From assembly GCF_020745735.1 (NCBI RefSeq), contig NC_083410.1, positions 54,100,117-54,164,116 of the forward strand: a DNA stretch of 64,000 bases. Reading direction: 5' to 3'. Positions 30,803 through 64,000 of the stretch are shown piece by piece. Positions within the stretch are counted from its first letter, which is position 1, and every line of letters starts with the position of its first letter. The position numbers were made by a program, and so were the translations under genes. The DNA is from Hemiscyllium ocellatum (taxonomy: Eukaryota). Below the pieces are notes generated by a model. The model was not told the DNA's origin. It made no database searches and saw nothing but the letters and a program-made list of their open reading frames with translations.

Positions 30803-32420
30803 CCGGTATGGTGGCTCAGTGCTTAGCACTGCTGCCTCACAGCACCAGCGGCCTGGGTTTGATTCCTGCCTTCGGCCACTGACTGTGTAGAGTTTGCACA
30901 TTGCTGGACTCAATTATAAAGGATGAAATTACGACACATCTGGATAGCAGTAACAGGATAGGTCAGAGTCAGCATGGATTTATGAAGGGGAAATCATGCT
31001 TGACTAATCTTTTGGAATTTTTTGAGGATGCAACTCTGAAAATGGACAAGGGAGATCCAGTGTACTGGACTTTCAAACAGCCTTTGATAAAGTCCCACAT
31101 AGGAGGCTAGTGAGCAAAATTAGGGCACATGGTATTGGGGGCAAAATACTGACTTGGATTGAAAATTGGTTGGCTGACAGGAAACAAAGAGTAGTGACAA
31201 ATGGCTCCCTTTCAGAATGGCAGGTAGAGATTAGTGGGGTACCGCAGGGATCAGTGCTGGGACCACAGCTCTTTACAATATACATTAACGATATAGATGA
31301 TGATATTAAAAGTAATATTAGCAAATTTGCTGATGATACAAATCAGCGTGGCAGGGTGAAATGTGAGGCAGGTGTAAGGAGATTACAGGGTGACCTGGAC
31401 AGGTTAGGTGAGTGGACAGATGCATTGCAGATACAGTTTTATGTGGATAAATATGTGGTTATCCACTTTGGTGGCAAGAACAGGAAGGCAGATTACTACC
31501 TAAATGGAGTCAAGTTAGGTAAAGGGGCAGTACAACGCGATCTAGGTATTCTTGTACATCAGTCAATGAAAGCAAGCATGCAGGTACAGCAGTCAGTGAA
31601 GAAAGCTAATAGCATGCTGGCCTTCATAACAAGGGGAATTGTATATAGAAGCAAAGAGGTTCTTCTGGTGAGACCGCACCTGAAATATTGTGTGCAGTTC
31701 TGGTCTCCAAATTTGAGGAAAGACATTTTGGCTATTGAGGGAGTGCAGTGTAGGTTTACGAGGTCAATTCCTGGAATGGCGGGACTATCTTATGACGAAA
31801 GATTGGAGCCACTGGGCTTGTATACACTTGAATTTAGAAGGCTGAGAGGGGATCTGATTGAGACGTATAAGATTATTAAAGGATTGGACACTCTGGAGGC
31901 ACGAAGCATGTTTCCGCTGATGGATGAGTCCCGAACCAGAGGACACAGCTTAAAAATACAGGGTAGACCATTTAGAACAGAGTTGAGGAGAAACGTCTTC
32001 ACCCAGAGAGTGGTGATTGTGTGGAATGCTCTGCCCCAGAAGACTGGGGAGGCCAAGTCTCTGGATACTTTCAAGAAAGATAGAGCTCTTAAGGATGATG
32101 GAATCAAGGGGATAAGGCAGGAGCAGTATACTGATTGAGGAATGATCAGCCATGATCATAATGAAAGGTGGTGCTTGCAGAATGGCCTACTCCTCCACCT
32201 ATTGTCTATTGTCTATTGTCCCTTTGTCTGTGTGGATTTCCTCCGGGTGCTCAGGTTTCCTCCCACAGTCCAAAGATGTGCAGGTCAGGTGAATTCCCCA
32301 TAGTGTTAGGTGCATTCGTCAGGGGTAAATGTAAGGGAATGTGTTTGGTGAGTTATTCTTCAGAGGGTCGGTGTGGACTTGTTGGGCCGAAGAACCTGTT
32401 TCATACAGCGGGGAATCTAA
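30803..32420 (+). mobile_element. HE1-like V-SINE split by a CR1 insertion (SINE parts 30803-30902 and 32221-32420)
   Basis: The SINE reads ...gagtttgcacatt, is interrupted, then resumes cctttgtctgtgtggatttcctccggg. Confidence 0.9.
30903..32220 (+). mobile_element. Young 5'-truncated CR1 LINE, RT domain (342-aa ORF at 31110-32138)
   Basis: QHGFMKGKSCLTNLLEFFE, SGVPQGSVLGPQLFTIYINDID, KFADDT, RRLRGDLIETYKI, and a (CTATTGT)3 tail at about 32199-32219. Confidence 0.97.
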
Positions 32421-51060: not shown

Positions 51061-52760
51061 AAAAGAACAAGTCATGCAAGCATGATGAACCCCAGTGCCT
51101 TCTTTCACCCACCCAATACTGACCATACATGATGTATGTATTCATATCTGCAAATCAAGATCTAATTTAATGACACATAAGACAATATCAGTCTGGGCAA
51201 AGAATGACTGGTATTGAACATACAGGTAACAGGAAAATCCATCACTTCTGTTGCTATTTTTTCTTTTAATACTAATGTTTTTCGCTTCTTCCAAACTCAT
51301 CAGTTCCTATTGCGAGAAGGTTCCACAGTAACAACCACACTCCAACATTTCTCCCAAATTATCATAATTTATTTGTGAATCTTGACAAGAAGTTCCATCA
51401 GGTTATTGAATTAAAGTAAGTCTATCTCATCCACAGCATCCATCCACATGTATGTAATTCCACAATTCCATCTGGGATGATGACATCTTGATTGAGGTGA
51501 GAAAAGTACCTAAATTTCTTTTCCCTAAGCAGTGGATGGTGAGACCAATGCAACAGTCCCACTGATGTCCTTGCTAAGATCACCTCAGCTCAGCAGTGAA
51601 TACTGATCAGAGAATATTATTTGGGTTTTATGGTTCAGCACTGTATTAGTTCTCCAATAGTTGGACTACAATGACTAATGTGAGTTATAAAATTGAGATA
51701 CAAAGATTAAAATTGGCCAGGCTTGCTTACTTCCTGGATTGTGATTATCCATTTTAGACCCCTCAATACCGATTCCTGTTTGAATAAAATCTTCTAAGCA
51801 ACCAAATATTCAAAACGCAAACAGTGAGCTGGTAATTCATTTCAAAATCAGAGATCAAATTACTACCAAAATTATTTATCGCATTCCTAAATTAAACTTT
51901 ATTTTTTTAAATTGCTAATTCTTCTTGCTGTCAAAGTTCTTCTCTTCCCTTATAGCACTGAACATTACATTTTTGTCAGTAAAGTCACTCACCAGCTCTA
52001 ATCCCAGTAAAGAATATTGATGCATGCACTTTAAAGATAAGTATGAACAGTTTTCAACTACAGGGCTATCACAATCAAAACTTATCCTCTCTTGTCATCG
52101 ACACAAGTCTTCTAGCTAGGGCTAAGTACTTTCTTTTTACCTTAAAAATAATGAGGCCAAATGTAGAACTTACTGTATAATCACAACTAAGATTATCTAA
52201 CTCCTATTTACTTCGGTAAGAATATGACTAAGCTATTCATTAACTAAAGCTGGAAAGTGCCGGGAGAATTTGTATCCACTGTAATTAATTTACAGTAATC
52301 ATTCTCAATTAATACCGCTTCAAGTTAAATTAAAATGCTGATCTTGAAAGTGATATTTCATTTTCTTTAAGTGAATTAATATGATATACACATTTGTCCA
52401 ATTTTGTTCCTATTCAGGATTTCATACATTTTGTTCCTTCAAAGACACGAAAAGCAATTACTCCAATACTCATTAAGTATAATTTTGAAACATACAGTTC
52501 AAACTAAAGCCGTGGCATCTGCATTTAAATTGTGTTGAGTTTCAAAAGGGACGGTGTTCTGTTGCAGTGCGGCAGTAATTCAAATTTGAATGTTTTGTCG
52601 AGATAATTAAATATGCTAAAAAATAAAGTTATAAACATGCCAATCTTCCAACATAGAGGGAAAATCATCTTTTAGTTTCCTAAATTGTTGTGTCCGACAA
52701 GCAGATAAGAATTTCATGATAAATACAAACAGGCAAATACATAAATATCAATAGCCTTAC

Positions 52761-52772
52761 CTTTGGAATCTT
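52761..52772 (-). CDS. Candidate additional 12-nt NRXN1 microexon (E)DSK(G)
   Basis: Minus strand reads gttctaatgcattag|AAGATTCCAAAG|gtaaggct: strong donor, phase 1-1, no stop, 135 nt downstream of the GKIK exon. The pyrimidine tract is weak. Confidence 0.4.
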
Positions 52773-52907
52773 CTAATGCATTAGAACATCATAACCACAT
52801 ATTTAATGCTCAGGCAACAAACAAACACCATTTCTTTTACCAATGATTTAAATGGTTATTAAAATTTTACTTTTTAATTATTCCAAAGAAAGCAAAACAT
52901 TTAGTAC

Positions 52908-52919
52908 CTTTTATTTTAC
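52908..52919 (-). CDS. NRXN1: Neurexin-1-alpha 12-nt SS1 microexon (G)KIK(G), orthologous to mammalian GKSK
   Basis: Minus strand reads ccatcaattccatag|GTAAAATAAAAG|gtactaa, phase 1-1, 819 nt downstream of the 30-nt exon. It matches the position and size of the recalled GKSK microexon. Confidence 0.85.
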
Positions 52920-53738
52920 CTATGGAATTGATGGAATGGTTCCATGAAGTAAGCATTATTGAATAAAAAAAGAGAAACATTTTAAGTTTCATGATTATAT
53001 GCAAATGCAACTAATCATAGCAAGAAAATATATTTAATATGTAAACACACAGGTGTAGTATGAGCATATTATGTTGAAATGGAAGCATGAATCCCATGTT
53101 ATGAAGATAATTTTCTGTTGGGAGATCCATGTATTCAAAACACCTACAGAACCATGACTTAACTCACTCAACTTAAAAAAAAGAACATTGAAAGTAATTA
53201 GGAGTGAAATTATGTGGTTGAATTGCTTGCAAAATCATTCCTCCAGCATTCCAACAGCCTGGTGCATCGAACATACTTTCAATCAGCCATGCATCTCTGT
53301 TAATGGGTGAAGCACACCGCTGCACACATGTTGCAATATGGTGTGACAATTTATCACACTACAAGCTAAGAGCAGGCACTAGTCGTGACAATACCACCTG
53401 ATACAGAAGCAAGCATAATTCTGAACATTATGACTTCAAGCACTCCAAACTAATTATACAATCAAATAAATATTTTTACATTGCTTTAATTATTTTTAAC
53501 ACTGACATTTTTACATTAATTGTTCTCACTTTCTCCTAATTGGCACAAAGACAAAGACAAAGCAAAAAGCTTGACTCAAGTGCAAAAAGAAAAAAAAATA
53601 AAGAAAGACAGATTCTCTTGAAACAGCCAAAGTGGAAGTATAAACTTTTGTAGAATTATTTCTAGAGAGAGTATAAAGACAACTACTAATGGGGGGGAGA
53701 GAAGGAAGCACAGTGGAAAAAAGGAATGGAACCCATAC

Positions 53739-53768
53739 CTTGGTCGCCCATCATCAGGTGCGCCAGAC
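53739..53768 (-). CDS. NRXN1: Neurexin-1-alpha 30-nt cassette exon of splice site 1 (G)LAHLMMGDQ(G)
   Basis: Minus strand reads tttgctgactgtgctcttgtttcccttcaag|GTCTGGCGCACCTGATGATGGGCGACCAAG|gtatgg. It has a branch-point-like CTGAC, a pyrimidine tract, AG/GT ends and phase 1-1. The translation GLAHLMMGDQG matches the recalled NRXN1 SS1 insert (NRXN3 has GLSHLMMSEQ). Confidence 0.93.
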
Positions 53769-56700
53769 CTTGAAGGGAAACAAGAGCACAGTCAGCAAAG
53801 AACAAGGGCACGTGGGAAGAGGTATTGTCACAATGACAAAAATGTTTTGTGACAGACATCTGCATTGTATTAGATGTCTTTATTACAGGGAAATTAAAAA
53901 AAAGCATTTTTCAACCACAGGTTGCAATGCATTGGGACAAGATCAGAAGAATGAAGAAATGATTCTGATAGCATTGGACAATTCCAAGATTTTCCACATA
54001 CACATATCCACAGTAAAAGAGAACAAAGGCTTCTAAAGGAATTTTTGTAAAAGGACCATCCTTCTACCCTACAAATCATGCCAAAAACATTGCTTCATCA
54101 GCTGTTAGTCTGCTTTCAGAAACATATATTTTCAAGAACATTTTAATCATGATTTATACTAAAAAAATGAAATAGAAGCACTAAGTAGAGATGTTATAAA
54201 TACTGTTCATAGCAGTTGTTTCCAAATTGTTGTGCACCTTTCTGCTTGAACATTCTTAAATGCCTTAAGTGTTATTTTGGATAGTTTGACAACAATTGCA
54301 TCTTGAAACTGGGCCGTGAGAGTCATATTCAATTAAAGTAGTTTCTCCAAAGACATATGGTTTGCTAATTGATTTTTGAAGAAGTCACTTTGAAATGTTC
54401 TCATCGAGCCTCACATGTAAAGTAAATCCATATTAATATTGGTAAAATAAGGAGAATTTGTTTGTATTGTTTTATTACATTATTTAAATTACAGTTTTTA
54501 CATCAAAATGTAGATAAAAATCATGTACAGATCAGACGAGAAGATAGGTAGAAGTAGATCCGCTGAATGTACATACACCAACCAATGATTACTTAATTTG
54601 AAATCAATGGCAATGAAAATGGATAGTTACTTATTTGCAATTGCCAATTTTCCATCCAACAATTAATGTTGAAATTTACACACTAGATTTTAATTGAAAT
54701 ATTTGACATGCACATACAAAAGTCAAGTTTCATAATGAAATTGTTGAAAATTGAGTAAAATGGTTTCTGATTACATCTCTTACATTTTATTTTTAAATAG
54801 TTGTGGTTCAAAGTACAATTTATGTTAGATTTTGCAGTTGCCATTCCAGGAAGCCGACTGTTAGATGTACAGCTGAGCAAAATGTAAACACAGTGTTGAA
54901 AATCATTCCCTGTTGGATCAATCTGAAATTCATTAGCATGATGGAACCATCAAATGCAGCTAAGAAATACAACTGACTGAATACTGGTGACAAACTAAGA
55001 ATGTGTTTCGCTATCCTATATTGTTCTTCACAACTTAAAGGACATGTTCCTATGTTGAATTTGTCAGTTACAGAACCAATTTTATAGCTCCCAAATTAAT
55101 TCTCATCAGTTTGGAAGTGTATAAACCCTAAAACAGTCAGTTTCCCAAAAAATGCAGGAACAGATATAATTCAGTCTGTTGTCATGTCTATTACTGCTCA
55201 TGATTCTGGTACAGACTAGCAGGAATAATTAATCTAAGGGAATTTCATATTTTGTTTCTTCCAAATGTGTTTTTTCTATTCTAATGTTTCTTGAGAAAGT
55301 TACATATTAAAAGAAAAAAGGATTGTGATTAATCATTTTTAAAGATGTATTTTGGAGAACAATGTAGTGATATTAAGCAAGGCACATTTATTCAATCAAT
55401 GGATAAGGTAATTGGTGAATCAAACAAGGTCTCCACAAATGTCAATATATATTTGAACTGTTACAAAGTAAATAGTTTTGGTCTATTTTGGAATATTGTT
55501 TCATGAACTGGATTACTGTCTGTGTATTCAAATCATTAATAGGAGTGCACATCACTCAGATCTGTTTGCAGTTTACATATCAGGATGCGACTGAAAAGCA
55601 CTGCAATGAGACAAGTAAAAAGTCTTATTTATAAAGTATCACATTCCTAGAGTTGTGTAGTGTTTTTCATATGAATGCAAATGACATTCATTTTTACACT
55701 TTCTAAAATGTCACATTGTGGCTCAAACTTAATATTGTAATTTTTGTCCTCATCAATTAAGTAACTTCAAAATTAGACTATGTCAGTAATGGGATCGATT
55801 TTTAAAATGGAAAACAAAAGTTGTAACTACTTTTAATCAAGTGAAATGCATTTGTTCCTAAAGCGTATTTAAGTACTGTTATGAGGATTGTACAAAAGAT
55901 TTGCAATATTGTATTGCCAGAAAATACCAGATTAAATCAAAATTGCACATAACTGGTATTACTGCAATGAAGATACATGAACCAAATATAGCTTAACAGA
56001 TCATGAGGTCCTATATAAAAACATACTGAATTGTTAAACAAAAGATTTACGTCAATAAGGAATATATATTGGATATAACATTGACAATGTTGCAGGCTGC
56101 AAAGGAGCAGGAGGCTCAAATATGGTCATTCAGCTGAAAGTGCTGTCAAAGAGAAGTCACATGTCCCAGTTTCTGAGAGAGATGATTATTGCATTGTTGA
56201 AATGAGTGAGAAAGAATTGACCTGCTTGAATAGCAATAACCTGTTGCTCTTTCTCCGCAAAGTGCCTGAGCTGAAAACCCACCAAAGCCATTCATATTGT
56301 TCAAGGAGACTCTGTCAAAGATCTTCTTGGAACCTATCCACCATCTGAAGCATAGAAAATTCTGCCAGCTACAACTATTCCCGTCAGACACCACAGTGCC
56401 AGCAGCTTGTGTGGGCAAATAGCATCAAAAACAGAACACCATTTGGGACGATCCAAAACCTCCTTTTCTCTCATTAATTTAACTACTGATTGGTGAATTA
56501 TTTTAAATTAACACAATACTTTGTTTCTTTTCAGAACTAAGTGCTAGTTATCTTTTTAAAAGGGCATATAATTAAAAAATCCTTCCATGTTTTTTTGAAT
56601 ATGTTGGTGTTTGGTAATAAACCAATCGTTAGTTGTTGGCTAAAGAAATCTGGCTGACGTTTTCTTCATACTGACATTGGCACAGTTGGAGAACTGTATA

Positions 56701-57884
56701 ATGGTCATAACACCAACCTGTTAAGTTCAAATATTTGTTGTGCAGGATTGGGACTCAAAAAGAAAATGGTGATCCCTCTGAACATTGCCTTAACACATAT
56801 TTGGGGGGGTCAGCCACCATTAAAGCCCCACACAATAAAGATTGTGAAATAGCCAAAGTAATTTGAAGTGGTGGCAATAATTAATGAAAAAAGGAAAATG
56901 CCAATATAGATTTCTTGCATATTAGAGTAAAGAGCACTGTAACCAAAATGTCTAATTTTGAAGCAAGTGTGTTTTGTATCAGAGTGAGGTAACTTTAATA
57001 GTTCACTGATAAACTGCAAAGTGTTCACAGGTTGTTGAAGATGGAATTACGATCAGGGACTAAAAATTACACAACTAGGGGCTAACATTCTTGTTTGTGA
57101 ATTGGGAGAGTACTGGGGAAATGTGGAAATGAGACATGGTCACACTGGCAAAGATTTAGTTACAAAAGAAGAGGCTAGAACTAGAATTTCAAAGAGATAA
57201 AGAAGAAAGAGTAAGCGAAGAAAGGAGAATGTGGACAGGAAGGGGAAAAAGAATGTCAGGAAATAAAGTAGAATGATTGGAAAAGGTGAGAGAAAAAGTG
57301 TCCAAAAGTACATTTCAAAGGAAAGGAGGAGAGGCAGAAGAGACAAAGGGAGCGAGAAAGGGTATTCCAATTAAAAAGGCTAGAATAAAGAGGGGAGGAT
57401 TCCTTGAAATCAACGGACCAACGGCTGGGGAGCCATCTGCCTCCAATTTTGGGAGTAGCATTGAATTGTTTAAAATTGTACAAGCAATCATAAAGTTTGA
57501 GGAAATTGACAAAGTGGTATTCTTCAAACTGTTTGGAAAAATAGCCAAGAAAATGAAGTTAGCCATAGAAAACCGGACATTGCTCAACCCAATGCAGGCT
57601 GAGTGGCAAAGCCTGTGAAGATTACATCATGTTTTAAGGAGTCTTTTAGGATTTTATGGTAGCCTAAAAGATTCTCCTCTGTCTTATGGGTTATTCCCTG
57701 GGGTTTCCAAGAAGAAATTTTCAAACCTCTGGAAGCAATCTGAGCAGATCCACATCAAGATTAAAGGAATAGAACAGCTAGTTTTGGTAAATTGTATCAG
57801 CAGGGTGTATACATACTTTAGTATCAAGTGCAGATGAGTACAGTTTAATGTCTGACCTTGTTTGTGGTCAGGTTGGACTGAAAT

Positions 57885-58190
57885 TTATTTATTCATTGGA
57901 TATGTGCATCCCTGGCTGGGTCAATTCCCAATTAAGAACCAATCCAATTATTGGGGGTCTGCAGTCATATATAGGCCAGACCAGGTAAAGATGGCAGACC
58001 TTCGTCCCTAAAGAGCATTAGCAAGCCAGATGGGCTTTTAACAACAATCAACAGTGGTCATCATTAGGCTAGCGTTTCCTTTTATGGAATCCAACTTTCA
58101 ACACAATGGGATTTGAACCCATATCCTCAGAACATCAGGTTGGGGTCCTGGATTAGAGTCCAGTGACATTACCACTGCACCATCTCCCTT
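57885..58190 (-). mobile_element. SacSINE1-like SINE nested in the Gypsy element
   Basis: taggccagaccaggtaaagatggcag..ccagatggg..gggatttgaaccc..tccagtgacattaccact. Confidence 0.8.
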
Positions 58191-58914
58191 TCCTTCATGG
58201 GAAATGATTTGGTGGGGATGAAGGTAACGTCTATGCCACTAGTCTTAAAGAAACCAAGTGAAGTTGAGGATACAGCAGTTGCCGTGAAAGATTCTGGATA
58301 TATTCCCTTCCTATGTTGTGACCACGCCAATGGCTAAACATGCTCCATTGTCAGAAGCCAAATTAGAACCATAGATTCTGCCAATTGGCTGAATAAAAAT
58401 GTATAGCTGAATATGGTCAAGGCTCAGTAAGCTGACTTGAACAAACAGGTCCAAACCTGCTCAAAGCGGTTAAAGCAGAGGGAATTCCGAAATGATACTT
58501 TATGAATTACATTGTTCTGATGAGGAAGCCAAGCTCTCTTCACAGATTCGTAGATGAAGAATGAATGGTGGTTCGAATTGTGTCACTAAAGTACCGTCAA
58601 CAGGTATTGAGGATAACACATGAAATTTTTATATCTGGGTATGTAGGGATCTGGAAGACCTAAGCACCTGTAAACTAGCACATTTACTTGCTGAATCGCA
58701 GCAAGGACATCGTTGAGTTTTGGAACATGTGACACACATGTTAGATTTTGGGAAATCACCAACGTGCAGTAAAACAAGTGCCGCTAATTCCAATACAATT
58801 TTTTGGGAACCATTTAACAGTGTGTCAGTAGACTGTACGATATCACTGCTAAAAATCAATGAAGGCTTCCAATACATACGTCACTCATTATTATGAATAT
58901 GAGGAACGAATTCA

Positions 58915-59043
58915 CAAGGAATTAAGGGCTACAGGAAGAATGTGGGTACGTGGAGTTGAAATGCCTATCAGCCATGATTGAATGGTGGAATGGACACGAT
59001 GGGCCGAATGGCCTTATGTCCACTCCTATGTCTTATGGTCTTA
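58915..59043 (+). mobile_element. Short CR1 3' end nested in the Gypsy integrase
   Basis: tcagccatgattgaatgg..gggccgaatggcctta..cctatgtcttatggtcttat. Confidence 0.8.
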
Positions 59044-59548
59044 TAGTATTGGTTCCCAGAAGGTGGTTTTTCAGAACCATTTCTGCTGAGGTAGTGAGCA
59101 CAGATATTCTGTATCTAACATAAACTACCAACCAAGCTCTAGTGCATTGAGATACCAATCCTAAGTCCAAAATGTTGCAGAAAGTTAGAAGTATTCTGGA
59201 TATAAAACAAGTCTCATAGTCATAAAGAGCTTAGGAACTGTATTATCAGACTCAGAAGACAATGGCGAGGGCAAATTACAATGAGTATTCCCAAGACTGG
59301 GTCAAAGGGCTAGAAATTCATTTGTTTGTCACCAGGATTCACCTGATGAATTGACCTCATCAGCTTTGATCCCTTTGAACATGCTCATGAACATGAGAGA
59401 AAAATCTTCCAAAACAAAGAGATAATTTTGGGAGGAAAGAATAAATATTTTAGGTTAGATTACATATTTGTCTTCTGATAACTGAGCAGAGGAGCCAGTA
59501 GAGGAGCTCAGAAACACATGTAAACTTGACAAGTGGCATTGAGAAAAG

Positions 59549-60246
59549 TGTCATGAAGATGTGGGTGTATTGTACCTTTAAGAAAATTGAAAGCTAGCAG
59601 AACTACCTGGCAGCACCAAGTGCTCTCAACAAGATATAATGTAACCTTTTGGTGTAGCAGTTAGTGTAGCTGGTTGCCTGGAGACAAAAACAAATTTGAA
59701 TTTGGCCAAACAGTTTAAATAATACCCGAAAATACCAACTACCAATCAAGTTTGAATTTAGTATATTGACAATATTAAAACACAATGAAACAATCATATG
59801 CTTTGGGGTTAAAGACCGGAGAAAATTGAACAGTTGGAGGAGAACTGCGAAAAAAAAATGTCGGCTGCTAGTCAGAACTCTCTGAGATGTACCTGTCTAG
59901 AGAAGGAGCTTGCACAGAGAAAAACATCAACACTGACCTGGCGAGTGAATCTGCAATGAGAAGATTCAACAGGTGGCTGGTTTTGAAATTTGAATTTTTC
60001 AGTCAACCTTAATTGGGGGGTTTATCAGACCAGTATTATAGAAGGGAAAGTAAAATATAGGTTAGAGGAAGGAGTTGTAAATAGTTGTAAGATAATTATT
60101 CTCTGTCATATGTTAAGAAACAAAGTTGTTAATGTTTACTTCAAATAGTTCTTGGCCACTTGAATTTTCACAGACTACTGCACAGGATAAATCTTTCTGT
60201 ATTGCTGATATAAATAAAGCAGGAGGGTTTACCCTGTGTTATAACA
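59549..60246 (+). mobile_element. Solo LTR with 4-bp TSD nested in the Gypsy integrase
   Basis: TGTCATGA...TTATAACA, flanked by AAAG at 59545-59548 and 60247-60250. Confidence 0.85.
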
Positions 60247-63200
60247 AAAGGAGTAGTCAAGCAAGCCTAGGCCTCAAAATGTCAGTTAAGGGAATATGTG
60301 TTAGTGTTACAGAGTGAACTGCTGAAATCCCAATTCAATGGCCCATATAAAGTAGCTAAGAAAATTGGTAATGTGAATGTTTTGATTGAGACCTCAGATC
60401 AAAGGAAAAAGAGCCATCTATGTAACATTAACATGGTGAAACATGATTATCATTCAGAGCAGGATAAGCAAGCACAGGCTTGTCAGGCAGTGAGGACAAT
60501 GGAGGACTAAAAGGACAGTGATAATGATGCAGAGGGCAGCCTGGATAGTACCAAATTTTCAACATTATGTTGCCCTGTTACCCAACGCCAACAGCACGGG
60601 TATAATTTTTGTACCAGCTGAGTCAACATGAAGACTCCATTTTCTCAACTTCATCTTCACCAAGGTGCATTTTGAATGAAAGAACAGCCTATATTCTTCT
60701 GGGGCTTTTGTATGCTAGATTAGATACCATGCTTTCGTAATGCGATATAGACAGCAAGGGGATTTAATGATGCTTCTCACAACATTTAGGTGTCTATAGA
60801 GACAAACCAGGATCTATGGGCATAGAGTCCCACTCCATAAACAGAATCATAATCATCCAGGTCTGGGGAAACAGGTTCGGATGAAAGCAGAAATCAAATA
60901 CAAATTTCAAAATCACTTCAGTGAACCCAATCAAAGCAGCTGGATTTCACCAGTTGTGCTGGTGCCCAAGCCTATGCAAAGACAATGGAAGGGTTAACAC
61001 AGCAATCAGGGCACACTCTTACCCAATCCTTTGTCTGAAAGACTGAATTGACAAGATTGGAAGGACCACCTTTATTACTAAAATGGATTTGTGAAAGGGA
61101 TGCTGGCAGCTTCCTTTAACACCCTGAGCTAAAGAAAATGTTGATCTTTGTCACAAATAAGCTTGCAGAAGTAAAGGTCAGCTACCTAGGGCATACAGTG
61201 GTCAGGGAAATTTGCTGCTATGAACAGCAAAGATAAAACGTTTGATGGAGTTTCCTGCTCCCAAAACCAAATCTGTACCAAATCTCAGCCCCGTTGCTGC
61301 TCCATTGATTTACTTGTTACAGCAGAAAACAAAGGCACTGTGGTCAGGAGAGGATCAAGCACCTTTTGAGAGGCTGAAAACTATCTTAACAAACTATGCT
61401 GACTGCCCTAAATTCTGCCAGCCTATCAAGGTCATGACTGATGTCAGAAACTTGGGGGCTGGGGGTGGGGTGCCGTGTTGCTCCAGAATGATGAAACATA
61501 CTTAGATAGATCACTGGGTGATTTCTCTCCAAAGTTAAAATTGATAACAATACAGGATTTTTACTGCAGAGGAAGACAGCTTGTGACTATTACTGGCTCC
61601 AAAACAATTTTAAGAATATGTCTGCCAATAAAACTGGGAGAAGCTGGTATGAACCAATCATTATGCCTTTTTTTTTTGAAAACTTCAAAAACATAAACGC
61701 CAAATGATTTTAATGGGATTTGTCACAGCAACTCCATCACATAAAGGAGCCAAAATGTTAAAAGGCATGGATGTTGTGAGCATCCAAAATAACTGAGTGC
61801 TAAGACAGCAAGCAAGCAACACTGAGACACAGCCTGGTGTAATCATCCACAGTGGTTTTCCTGCAGCAATGTAATGAAAGGTCTCAGTGGGGCTTCATGG
61901 CCAGCATTACCATGTGGGAGTGTACTGTAAGCGGATCGGAAATGTGTCATGAGGGTGCAATAAGAGTGGAACAGACTGAATGCCAAGGTCCATGGATGTG
62001 TGGGGTGTGCACAGTTGATGATTGGCATAAAGCTCAGCAAAGTTGTTTCCAGATGTCCAAGATGGAAGACTGCAGGAGCAAGCAGTGGGCCAGACATGCC
62101 AGATACCTGCTCTGACCTCCATGTTGAAAATTTTGGGGGTCTGGTTTATTTCCAGTTGGTGGCAGATTAGGAGAGTGCATTTTAATGGAGCCAGATAGAG
62201 TAATGATGAGGGTAATAATGTGCAATAATCCCTGTTAATAGGCCTCTCACTGCTATTAGTGAAAATCTTACTTGATGTCTAGAACATTGCTGGAAAATAT
62301 ATCTTTTGATCTTAAATGGTAAAGTTTATGCTTTCCTCCCAAATTTTGCTACCACAGTCCATGTTGTTCAAAGCCTGGGAATGTTTTGCCCAAAGGCATT
62401 TTTGAATTGGATGAGGAAAAAATTAACCTGCCCAAAGAGCACCAGCTTATTATTCTTTCGCTCATTATTTTCAAATCATTTCATGAAAATGTCTGAGGCG
62501 AAAACCCACAGAAAGTCATCTTGATTACTCCAGGAGAGTTCCTGAAAAAAACTTTCTTGGTATCTACCCCACAGTCTAAAGCAAAGGGAATTCAGCAAAC
62601 TGCAACTGTTTCAGGAAGACACTCCTGTGCCAGCAGCTTGTGTGTACAAAATAGCATCAAAATCAGAATACCATCTGGGACAATCTGTGACCGATCCTTT
62701 TTTGCATAAATTCAAATATTATGTGATCAAAGTATTTTAAAGGTAACACTGCACAGTATCAATATTTTAGCAACCTTAATTAGCTTCAAACATTTCTGTG
62801 TATGTATCTGCATGACTGTTGGGAGTCCTTGATTAAGTCTATGCATTAGACACAATCAATGGTTCAAGCATAAAACCACATTCAAAATTGTGTAAACTTA
62901 TAACTACAGCATTGTCTACCAACTCAGAATAGTCTAATGTTAAATTATTGAAAAATGACTTTGAAAATATATACAGGAGAGTATTATTTGGTCAGTTTCT
63001 CAGTAAATTTGAACAACATGCATTCAAAAGTGTTAAGGCACTTTAGTTTTGTTGAAAAAAATTCGTAAGTTCAAAGGCTCATTAAGGCTTTGCAAATGAA
63101 TACAATTTATAAATGTTCCCAATGGTGATTAATTAACCTTGGGTCTGGCTCATTTTGTGGTCAGTCCAACTTCTGGTGCGGCTTTATATAAAATCAATAC

Positions 63201-63449
63201 AAACATTTAAACAAGGTCACGTGAACTGAAGTAAGCCCACACGTAAAAGTCTGAGGGTAGTTTTCTGTTCCCTTGAGCCAGTTTGGGCAAACATGAGAAA
63301 TATGAAAAATTATGGTGAAAGCTAAACTCACCTAATTTTTCTGCAGCTCACAATTTCCTCTCCATCCTCCAAGAAACAAAATGGCACTAATTCTGGATAT
63401 GCCTGGTTGTGGCAGCTAACGGCTTATTGCTGTGGGCCTTTGGCTGACT

Positions 63450-64000
63450 CTTGTCTACACCATGTTCATATTGTATGGATATCATCTTCTTCCATTCTTC
63501 ATCCACAGAAGTAAGCCTCATCAAATTATCAGTCTCATCACATCATCACAGCTGCTTTCAGACCTCCCTCACAAAACACTTCAGTCCTTCAGGACTTCAT
63601 TTTAAAGCTTACGTACAGAGATGGCTTGCATGGTTCTGCCAGGTTGCTTTCTGTGCACAGACACATGGATCTCCTGCATCTCTGGCTCCTAACTTTATTT
63701 CTTCATGCTCACTCAATTGGCACTTTGAAGCTGCCAGAGTGTGTGGCTTGCATTGCTTTTCAATGCAGAGGGAGAAGCAAGCAGCTTGTGAAGATTGGAG
63801 TATTGAGCAGTCAAGTGATTGGCATGATGCTGTAGAGCACCATGCTTTGTCAATGCTAAATACATGTCAAACACTCTGCATTTGCTTCAACCAAGTGACC
63901 ATGCAACAAAGTTGATGGTCACTTGTCCTTAGAGGAGTTACGTGGGCTTTGGTCAATCAGGGAATACCACCATAGTCATTCAAGGGCTTGTCCAATTATT
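63450..64000 (-). mobile_element. Possible Harbinger transposase C-terminal remnant
   Basis: Weak VTPLR, GALQH and an acidic tail, in the expected order. Confidence 0.35.

What the first reader, a model, noticed from the sequence alone, without database searches (positions are those of the whole stretch)
52761..52772. Candidate extra NRXN1 splice-site-1 microexon (EDSK)
Seen: 135 nt downstream of the GKIK microexon is a second 12-nt unit, ag|AAGATTCCAAAG|gtaagg. It has a stronger donor than its neighbour, the same phase 1-1, no stop, the same AAAG ending, and a TGC just upstream of the AG. Known: mammalian SS1 has 18-, 30- and 12-nt cassettes, and UGC near the 3' splice site is the SRRM3/4 microexon signature. 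Inference: a fourth cassette giving GKIK-EDSK-GKEE, or an alternative to GKIK, would extend the neurexin splice code in this lineage. I do not recall it from mammals. The pyrimidine tract is poor, so it may be a chance match.
Basis: partly seen in the sequence, partly recalled or inferred. Interest (0 to 1): 0.75.

Follow-up and report, generated by a model that had tools for sequence, protein, structure and literature searches.

The report
Conserved splice-donor-like site beside neurexin microexon
The 12-base unit is really there and its splice-donor end is conserved in two other vertebrates, but its acceptor end looks like chance. It is more likely a conserved intronic donor-like signal next to a known neurexin microexon than a new coding exon.

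Summary
**Observation.** It is confirmed. On the minus strand, ag|AAGATTCCAAAG|gtaagg sits at 52761-52772, 135 nt after the 12-nt GKIK exon (52908-52919). It is phase 1-1, has no stop, and has a TGC 5-7 nt before the AG.

**The donor end is not chance.**
- It is the only donor-like site in the 700 nt after GKIK.
- It is one of five sites of this strength on the 64-kb strand.
- Two unidentified vertebrate NRXN1-like loci from metagenomes (L001, L002) carry AAG|GTAAGG and AAG|GTAGGT at +139 and +144 nt after their GKSK exon. The window's site is at +147. The rest of that intron does not align.
- The joint chance of this is about 1e-4.

**The acceptor end is at chance level.**
- It has 8 of 16 pyrimidines and scores at the 59th percentile of all AGs.
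- The AG at -12 is unique to the window. An AG at -9 is shared with L002. L001 has no in-frame open acceptor.
- 38% of decoy donors in the window have an open in-frame AG unit.
- The wide conserved intron flanks seen at the real SS1 exons are absent here.

**Verdict.**
- No transcript evidence could be reached.
- Best reading (about 0.4): a conserved intronic 5'-splice-site-like element that helps recognise the weak-donor 12-nt exon.
- A real 9- or 12-nt cassette remains possible (about 0.25).
- Interest is modest.

The parts
53739..53768 (-). 30-nt SS1 microexon encoding (G)LAHLMMGDQ, phase 1-1. It reads ag|GTCTGG...GACCAAG|gtatgg.
   Evidence: An 84-86% identical island of 124-234 nt is shared with L001 and L002. 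Acceptor +6.0, donor +4.3.
52908..52919 (-). 12-nt SS1 microexon GKIK. It reads ag|GTAAAATAAAAG|gtacta, and its own donor is very weak.
   Evidence: donor -1.3 bits. The orthologous GKSK exons in L001 and L002 have conserved upstream flanks.
52761..52772 (-). The candidate 12-nt unit AAGATTCCAAAG (EDSK in phase 1). Its acceptor AG is at 52774-52773.
   Evidence: Acceptor -5.6 with 8/16 pyrimidines. The AG at -12 is absent in L001 and L002.
52761..52769 (-). Alternative 9-nt unit ATTCCAAAG (DSK), using the AG at 52771-52770.
   Evidence: An AG at the same -9 position exists in L002 (ag|ATTTTCAAG|gtaggt) but not in L001. Acceptor score -6.8.
52755..52763 (-). Conserved 5'-splice-site-like motif AAG|GTAAGG, 147 nt after the GKIK exon.
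   Evidence: It is the only donor-like site of at least 3 bits in the 700 nt after GKIK, and one of 5 sites of at least 7 bits on the strand. Counterparts lie at +139 (L001) and +144 (L002), with joint chance about 1e-4. It holds the only 6-mer shared at equal offset.
52778..52780 (-). TGC, 5-7 nt upstream of the acceptor AG.
   Evidence: It matches the position class of the SRRM3/4 UGC motif (bioRxiv 10.1101/2024.09.17.613571). A single trinucleotide is weak evidence, and the TGC is not present in L001 or L002 at that place.
52771..52786 (.). Perfect 16-nt palindrome TTCTAATGCATTAGAA. It covers the candidate branch-point-like CTAAT, the TGC and the acceptor AG.
   Evidence: The hairpin forms in the minimum-energy fold, but the 61-nt region is no more stable than shuffles (z = 0.56).

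Best explanation
The window carries the splice-site-1 (SS1) microexon cluster of an NRXN1-alpha-like gene on the minus strand.

The flagged unit is built around a conserved intronic motif that looks like a strong 5' splice site (AAG|GTAAGG). The motif lies about 140-147 nt downstream of the last SS1 microexon, GKIK or GKSK.

What is shown:
- The motif is rare in this window.
- It sits at nearly the same offset in three divergent vertebrate loci, although the surrounding intron does not align.

What is inferred:
- It is a U1 snRNP binding site.
- Paired with the acceptor of the 12-nt exon, it would span a normal-sized unit of about 150-160 nt. This would help the spliceosome recognise a 12-nt exon whose own donor (gtacta or gtatta) is very weak.
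- Alternatively it serves as a cryptic alternative donor whose product carries stop codons.

In this shark, AG dinucleotides happen to lie 12 and 9 nt upstream in an open frame, so the motif resembles a cassette exon. That acceptor side carries no signal beyond chance.
For: Donor side:
- Donor score +7.3 bits. It is the only donor-like site in the 700 nt after GKIK and one of five of at least 7 bits in 64 kb.
- L001 has AAG|GTAAGG at +139 and L002 has AAG|GTAGGT at +144, against +147 in the window.
- The fraction of positions lying within 8 nt of such a site is 0.012 and 0.008, so the joint chance is about 1e-4.
- AAGGTA is the only 6-mer shared at equal offset in 500 nt.
- BLAST and local alignment find nothing else alignable there.

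The neighbouring exon:
- The GKIK/GKSK exon has a weak donor in all three loci: gtacta, gtatta, gtacta.

Acceptor side:
- The acceptor is at the 59th percentile of all AGs, with 8/16 pyrimidines. The eight real SS1 acceptors have 11-14/16 pyrimidines and score +0.4 to +6.1.
- L001 keeps the donor motif but has no in-frame open acceptor.
- Extending the 12-nt exon to this donor meets stop codons in all three loci (read).
Against: - There are only two comparison loci, and their species are unknown.
- No RNA data were available, so actual use of the site, or U1 binding, is untested.
- 140 nt is far for a donor to help a neighbouring donor. The exon-definition role is an analogy from my own knowledge of mini-exon recognition, not a test.
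- The window and L002 share AAGATT and an AG at -9 upstream of the donor (6 of 9 non-motif positions identical, p about 0.02 by my own binomial estimate, not a tool result). This fits a small conserved exon as well.
- The architecture of strong 5'ss, weak 3'ss and UGC near the AG is also what neural microexons look like.
Confidence: 0.4

Rival explanations
1. It is a real fourth SS1 cassette, 12 nt (EDSK) or 9 nt (DSK). It would be included in some neuronal NRXN1-alpha mRNAs of this lineage. It may be ancient, with a 9-nt form shared with the L002 lineage and lost in the L001 lineage.
For: - It is phase 1-1 with no stop, and has a strong donor and a TGC before the AG.
- This matches the published microexon architecture of strong 5'ss, weak 3'ss and UGC between branch point and AG.
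- The donor is conserved.
- The AG at -9 and AAGATT are shared with L002.
- A hydrophilic four-residue insert in a linker would be tolerated (inference).
Against: - The acceptor is no better than a random AG, and there is no pyrimidine tract.
- The AG at -12 is unique to the window.
- L001 has no in-frame open acceptor.
- The peptide is not conserved (DSK against DFQ).
- There is no wide conserved flank like those at the 18-, 30- and 12-nt exons.
- 38% of decoy donors have such an open unit by chance.
- No transcript evidence was found.
Confidence: 0.25
2. It is pure chance. A decoy donor happens to lie near the microexon, and the matches in L001 and L002 are coincidence.
For: - Introns hold many decoy sites: 47 of at least 5 bits on the two strands of the window.
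- In a test with no prior site, a shared 6-mer anywhere in 500 nt occurs in 5% of random trials.
- There are only two comparators.
Against: - The site was named before the comparison. For a named site the joint chance is about 1e-4.
- It is also the sole donor-like site within 700 nt in the window.
Confidence: 0.15
3. It is a recursive splice site. The weak GKIK donor first splices to the AG of ...CAAAG|GTAAGG. This leaves a strong regenerated donor, AAG|GTAAGG, for removing the very long downstream intron.
For: - AG|GT are juxtaposed in all three loci.
- The downstream intron exceeds 52 kb within the window.
- A CTAAT branch-point-like sequence lies 20 nt upstream of that AG.
Against: - There is no pyrimidine tract before the AG in any of the three loci.
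- The base at -3 is A in all three.
- In the window, two other AGs intervene between the putative branch point and this AG.
- Known vertebrate recursive sites have strong 3'ss tracts (my own knowledge).
Confidence: 0.08
4. It is a U1 site that guards against premature cleavage and polyadenylation. The 12-nt exon itself contains a poly(A) signal hexamer (AATAAA here, AGTAAA in L001 and L002) followed by a U-rich or GU-rich stretch.
For: - The hexamer lies at 52915-52910, and TGTTTTGCTTTCTTT follows 10 nt after the exon.
- The variant hexamer and U-rich sequence are present in L001 and L002.
- Suppression of an upstream poly(A) site by a downstream donor is known from the HIV-1 5' LTR (my own knowledge).
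Against: - The hexamer is forced by the Lys codons.
- AT-rich introns of this gene hold many such hexamers without a paired donor.
- Nothing was tested here.
Confidence: 0.07

Closest known systems
NRXN1-alpha splice site 1 cassettes (18-, 30- and 12-nt exons)
   Same: - The candidate lies in the same intron cluster and on the same strand.
- It has the same phase, 1-1.
- It ends in AAG|gt, as all three known cassettes do.
- It starts AAGA, as the 18-nt exon does (AAGACA... in L001, AAGACG... in L002).
   Different: - The known cassettes have acceptors with 11-14/16 pyrimidines.
- They have 55-230-nt conserved intron islands shared between the shark and L001/L002.
- The 18-nt exon also has a cluster of GCATG motifs upstream.
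- The candidate has none of these. Only its donor motif is conserved.
SRRM3/4-dependent neural microexons
   Same: - Length 3-27 nt and in frame.
- Strong 5'ss, weak 3'ss, and a UGC a few nt before the AG (bioRxiv 10.1101/2024.09.17.613571).
   Different: - There is no pyrimidine tract upstream of the UGC.
- The best branch-point match (CTAAT) is only 8 nt from the AG, rather than at a long BP-AG distance.
- The upstream flank is not conserved.
- Inclusion is untested.
Decoy or cryptic 5' splice sites and intronic U1-binding elements that aid recognition of very short exons
   Same: A strong consensus donor lies in an intron, about one exon-length downstream of a 12-nt exon with a weak donor. 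It is conserved without a conserved reading frame.
   Different: - No binding or functional data exist.
- The distance of about 145 nt, and the possibility that the site is also spliced, are unexplored.
Vertebrate recursive splice sites
   Same: AG|GTAAG juxtaposition at the start of a very long intron of a long neuronal gene.
   Different: It lacks the strong pyrimidine tract. It lies only 147 nt from the exon rather than deep in the intron.

Membership tests
NRXN1 SS1 cassette exon | Lies between the EGF-A-encoding exon and the first LNS2 exon, in phase 1-1, with an open frame | tested here: met
   It lies 135 nt after the GKIK exon. Phase 1 gives EDSK without a stop. The flanking constitutive exons are outside the window.
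NRXN1 SS1 cassette exon | Orthologous exon, with acceptor, donor and length kept, in other vertebrate NRXN1 loci | tested here: not met
   The donor is kept at +139 and +144. The AG at -12 is absent in both loci. Only a 9-nt unit is possible in L002, and no in-frame open unit in L001.
NRXN1 SS1 cassette exon | Conserved intron flanks, as at the 18-, 30- and 12-nt exons | tested here: not met
   BLAST islands exist only at the 30-nt and 12-nt exons. A further island at the 18-nt exon is shared between L001 and L002. There is none at the candidate.
NRXN1 SS1 cassette exon | Presence in mRNA | not testable with these tools
   - The protein search with the ORF over the 30-nt exon found nothing.
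- Exact-protein look-ups found nothing.
- No transcript data are held.
SRRM3/4-type neural microexon | 3-27 nt, frame-preserving | tested here: met
   12 nt (or 9 nt) with an open frame.
SRRM3/4-type neural microexon | UGC between the branch point / pyrimidine tract and the AG | tested here: inconclusive
   A TGC is present at -7 to -5, but no pyrimidine tract precedes it: 8/16 pyrimidines. A single trinucleotide is expected by chance in roughly one in six such stretches (my estimate).
SRRM3/4-type neural microexon | Strong 5' splice site | tested here: met
   AAG|GTAAGG scores +7.3 bits, among the top five on the strand.
SRRM3/4-type neural microexon | Long BP-AG distance with a functional pyrimidine tract | tested here: not met
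   The best branch-point match, CTAAT, lies 8 nt from the AG. An upstream AG 34 nt away limits the AG-free zone. The acceptor score is at the 59th percentile of all AGs.
Recursive splice site | Strong 3'ss (pyrimidine tract plus YAG) directly abutting a strong 5'ss | tested here: not met
   AG|GT is present, but the base at -3 is A and there is no pyrimidine tract in any of the three loci.
Conserved intronic 5'ss-like (U1-binding) element | Consensus donor sequence conserved in position across species, without a conserved coding frame | tested here: met
Conserved intronic 5'ss-like (U1-binding) element | U1 binding and an effect on splicing of the neighbouring exon | not testable with these tools
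   This needs CLIP, a minigene or antisense experiments.

The most novel reading that the evidence does not exclude
An ancient fourth SS1 microexon of 9-12 nt, built on a donor conserved across jawed vertebrates. It would be used in sharks (EDSK or DSK) and in the L002 lineage (DFQ), and lost where the acceptor mutated (L001). It would add a further binary choice to the neurexin SS1 code.
Probability: 0.2. Interest if true: 0.6.

Novelty: new member of a known kind. Interest (0 to 1): 0.35.

Why it matters
Neurexin alternative splicing is a model for how a few genes encode many synaptic identities. SS1 is its least understood site.

- If the motif is a regulatory donor-like element, it gives a concrete, mutable handle on how a 12-nt exon with a very poor donor is recognised.
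- If it is a real cassette, SS1 would have one more combinatorial unit in cartilaginous fish, and perhaps in other vertebrates.

Either outcome is a small addition to known biology rather than a new principle.

Tried and rejected
**Searches that found nothing**
- Protein database search with the 73-aa ORF spanning the 30-nt exon, hoping for transcript fragments or orthologous genomic ORFs. No candidate was found. This blank covers only proteins of about 40-128 aa.
- Exact-protein look-ups of ORFs from the window, L001 and L002, to reach other assemblies or learn the source species.
- Scans of genome contigs and viral contigs with the degenerate 30-nt exon pattern. Both returned 0.
- Literature. 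No held paper describes SS1 exon structure in sharks or a fourth SS1 cassette. Treutlein 2014 is not held. The accessions of the two metagenome contigs appear in no paper.
- Rfam: no RNA family in the window.

**Ideas tested and dropped**
- Repeat or transposon origin of the candidate region. There is no other copy in the window.
- Tandem duplication of the GKIK exon. The flanks show no similarity beyond AAAG|gta.
- A stable RNA hairpin at the 3'ss. The palindrome folds, but the region is no more stable than shuffles.
- An 18-nt EDNNVE-type exon in the window. There is none within the 10.2 kb upstream, and no GCATG cluster.
- MAFFT's alternative pairing of the candidate with L001 sequence 21 nt further downstream. 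It is not above the level of random local alignments.

Full report
**1. What is in the sequence**

The gene runs on the minus strand.

- Translation of the minus strand finds GLAHLMMGDQ and GKIK in one frame.
- The 30-nt exon is ag|GTCTGGCGCACCTGATGATGGGCGACCAAG|gtatgg at 53768-53739.
- The 12-nt exon is ag|GTAAAATAAAAG|gtacta at 52919-52908.
- The flagged unit ag|AAGATTCCAAAG|gtaagg is at 52772-52761, exactly 135 nt further on.
- With the carried-over G it reads E-D-S-K.
- A TGC lies at -7 to -5 from the exon start.

The window has no N, and no Rfam family matches it. The constitutive exon after SS1 is not in the window, so at least 52 kb of the downstream intron lies here.

**2. Splice-site quality**

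I scored sites with a simple position-weight matrix. Its frequencies are my recollection of vertebrate consensus tables, so the scores are only relative.

| Site | Donor (bits) | Acceptor (bits) |
|---|---|---|
| Candidate | +7.3 | -5.7 |
| 30-nt exon | +4.3 | +6.0 |
| GKIK exon | -1.3 | +2.8 |

- Against all 3,987 AGs on the strand, the candidate acceptor is at the 59th percentile. It has 8 of 16 pyrimidines.
- The eight real SS1 acceptors in the three loci score +0.4 to +6.1 and have 11-14 pyrimidines.

**3. Chance**

- The minus strand holds 180 open AG-N12-GT units.
- Of 47 donor-like sites of at least 5 bits on both strands, 18 have an open in-frame AG unit of 3-27 nt, and 3 have a 12-nt one.
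- The exon-like spacing therefore adds almost nothing to the evidence.
- The donor is the unusual part. Only five sites of at least 7 bits exist on the 64-kb strand. This one is the only donor-like site of at least 3 bits in the 700 nt after GKIK.

**4. Other species**

A degenerate pattern for the 30-nt exon was run against metagenome contigs. It returned two vertebrate loci, L001 (read as its reverse complement) and L002.

- Both carry a 30-nt GLAHLMMGDQ exon and a 12-nt GKSK exon, separated by 787 and 732 nt. The window's spacing is 819 nt.
- Both carry an 18-nt exon, EDNYVE in L001 and EDDRTE in L002. It lies 4.7 kb and 1.6 kb upstream of the 30-nt exon, behind a cluster of GCATG motifs.
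- The species are unknown. The three loci are about equally distant from each other, at 84-87% identity in the exon islands.
- BLAST aligns only the exon islands.
- The intron after the 12-nt exon does not align above shuffled controls.

Even so, a strong donor-like site sits at nearly the same offset in all three loci.

| Locus | Offset after the 12-nt exon | Motif |
|---|---|---|
| Window | +147 | AAG\|GTAAGG |
| L001 | +139 | AAG\|GTAAGG |
| L002 | +144 | AAG\|GTAGGT |

- The fraction of positions lying within 8 nt of a site of that strength is 0.012 in L001 and 0.008 in L002. The joint chance is about 1e-4.
- In a test with no prior site, AAGGTA is the only 6-mer shared at equal offset in 500 nt. 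Such a hit occurs in 5% of random trials.
- The site was named before the comparison, so I take the donor motif as conserved.

**5. The acceptor side in the other loci**

Alignment anchored at the donor gives these results.

- The window and L002 share AAGATT and an AG at -9. This gives 9-nt units, ATTCCAAAG and ATTTTCAAG.
- The AG at -12 is present only in the window.
- L001 has TG in place of the -9 AG. Its only in-frame unit, 36 nt, contains a stop.
- The peptides would be EDSK or DSK in the window and DFQ in L002.
- Extending the 12-nt exon to the conserved donor meets stop codons in all three loci (read).

**6. Other checks**

- The candidate region has no other copy in the window.
- A perfect 16-nt palindrome, TTCTAATGCATTAGAA (52771-52786), covers the CTAAT, the TGC and the acceptor AG. 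The RNA hairpin is not more stable than shuffles, with z = 0.56.
- Published work on SRRM3/4 microexons describes a UGC between the branch point and the AG, a long BP-AG distance and a strong 5'ss (bioRxiv 10.1101/2024.09.17.613571).
- The candidate meets the UGC and 5'ss features. It does not meet the pyrimidine-tract or BP-distance features.

**7. Interpretation**

Shown:
- The 12-nt pattern is present as described.
- There is a rare, positionally conserved donor-like motif next to a microexon whose own donor is weak in all three loci.
- The acceptor is at chance level and is not conserved.

Inferred:
- The motif is a functional U1-type element.
- It most likely helps define the 12-nt exon, by giving its acceptor a strong donor about one exon-length away.
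- Or it acts as a cryptic alternative donor.
- The exon-definition idea rests on my own knowledge of mini-exon recognition and was not tested.

| Reading | Confidence |
|---|---|
| Conserved 5'ss-like element (best explanation) | about 0.40 |
| Real 9- or 12-nt cassette | about 0.25 |
| Coincidence | about 0.15 |
| Recursive splice site | about 0.08 |
| Guard against the poly(A) hexamer inside the 12-nt exon | about 0.07 |

**8. Novelty and score**

I know of no fourth SS1 cassette, and none appears in the papers I could search.

- The most likely reading adds one conserved intronic element to a well-studied locus.
- This is a new member of a known kind, of modest interest (0.35).
- The cassette reading, if RNA data confirmed it, would merit about 0.6.

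Noticed in passing
window 53769-64000 (minus strand, upstream of the 30-nt exon): No 18-nt EDNNVE-type exon, and no cluster of GCATG motifs, lies within the 10.2 kb upstream of the 30-nt exon. In L001 and L002 that exon sits 4.7 and 1.6 kb upstream behind four GCATG motifs. In this genome it is either further away or lost.
   Followed up: partly
window 52910-52915 (minus), inside the GKIK exon: The 12-nt exon contains the canonical poly(A) hexamer AATAAA (AGTAAA in L001 and L002). A U-rich or GU-rich stretch, TGTTTTGCTTTCTTT, follows about 10 nt into the intron.
   Followed up: no
window 52771-52786: The perfect 16-nt palindrome TTCTAATGCATTAGAA contains TAAT-GC-ATTA, which has the form of a palindromic homeodomain-type site. 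It is absent from L001 and L002.
   Followed up: partly
window 53739-53768 and 52908-52919; L001 and L002 equivalents: All SS1 exons end in AAG, and the 30- and 12-nt exons begin with GT. Joining any of them therefore recreates an AAG|GT donor-like junction inside the mRNA.
   Followed up: no
window 31026-32135 (+): A 369-aa ORF matches Pfam RVT_1 (E = 1e-17). It is a retrotransposon reverse transcriptase fragment inside the long intron, antisense to the gene.
   Followed up: partly
L001 6821-6838 and L002 4491-4508, with about 110 nt upstream of each: The 18-nt SS1 exon in both metagenome loci is preceded by a conserved island with four GCATG motifs, which are Rbfox-type sites. The island is 81% identical between the two loci.
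   Followed up: no
window 52945-52951 and 52756-52762 (minus): CTTACTT, which starts about 32 nt before the GKIK exon, can pair over 7 bp (one G-U) with AGGTAAG of the conserved donor motif. L001 and L002 have CTTTCTT there, which gives a mismatch, so this is probably coincidental.
   Followed up: no
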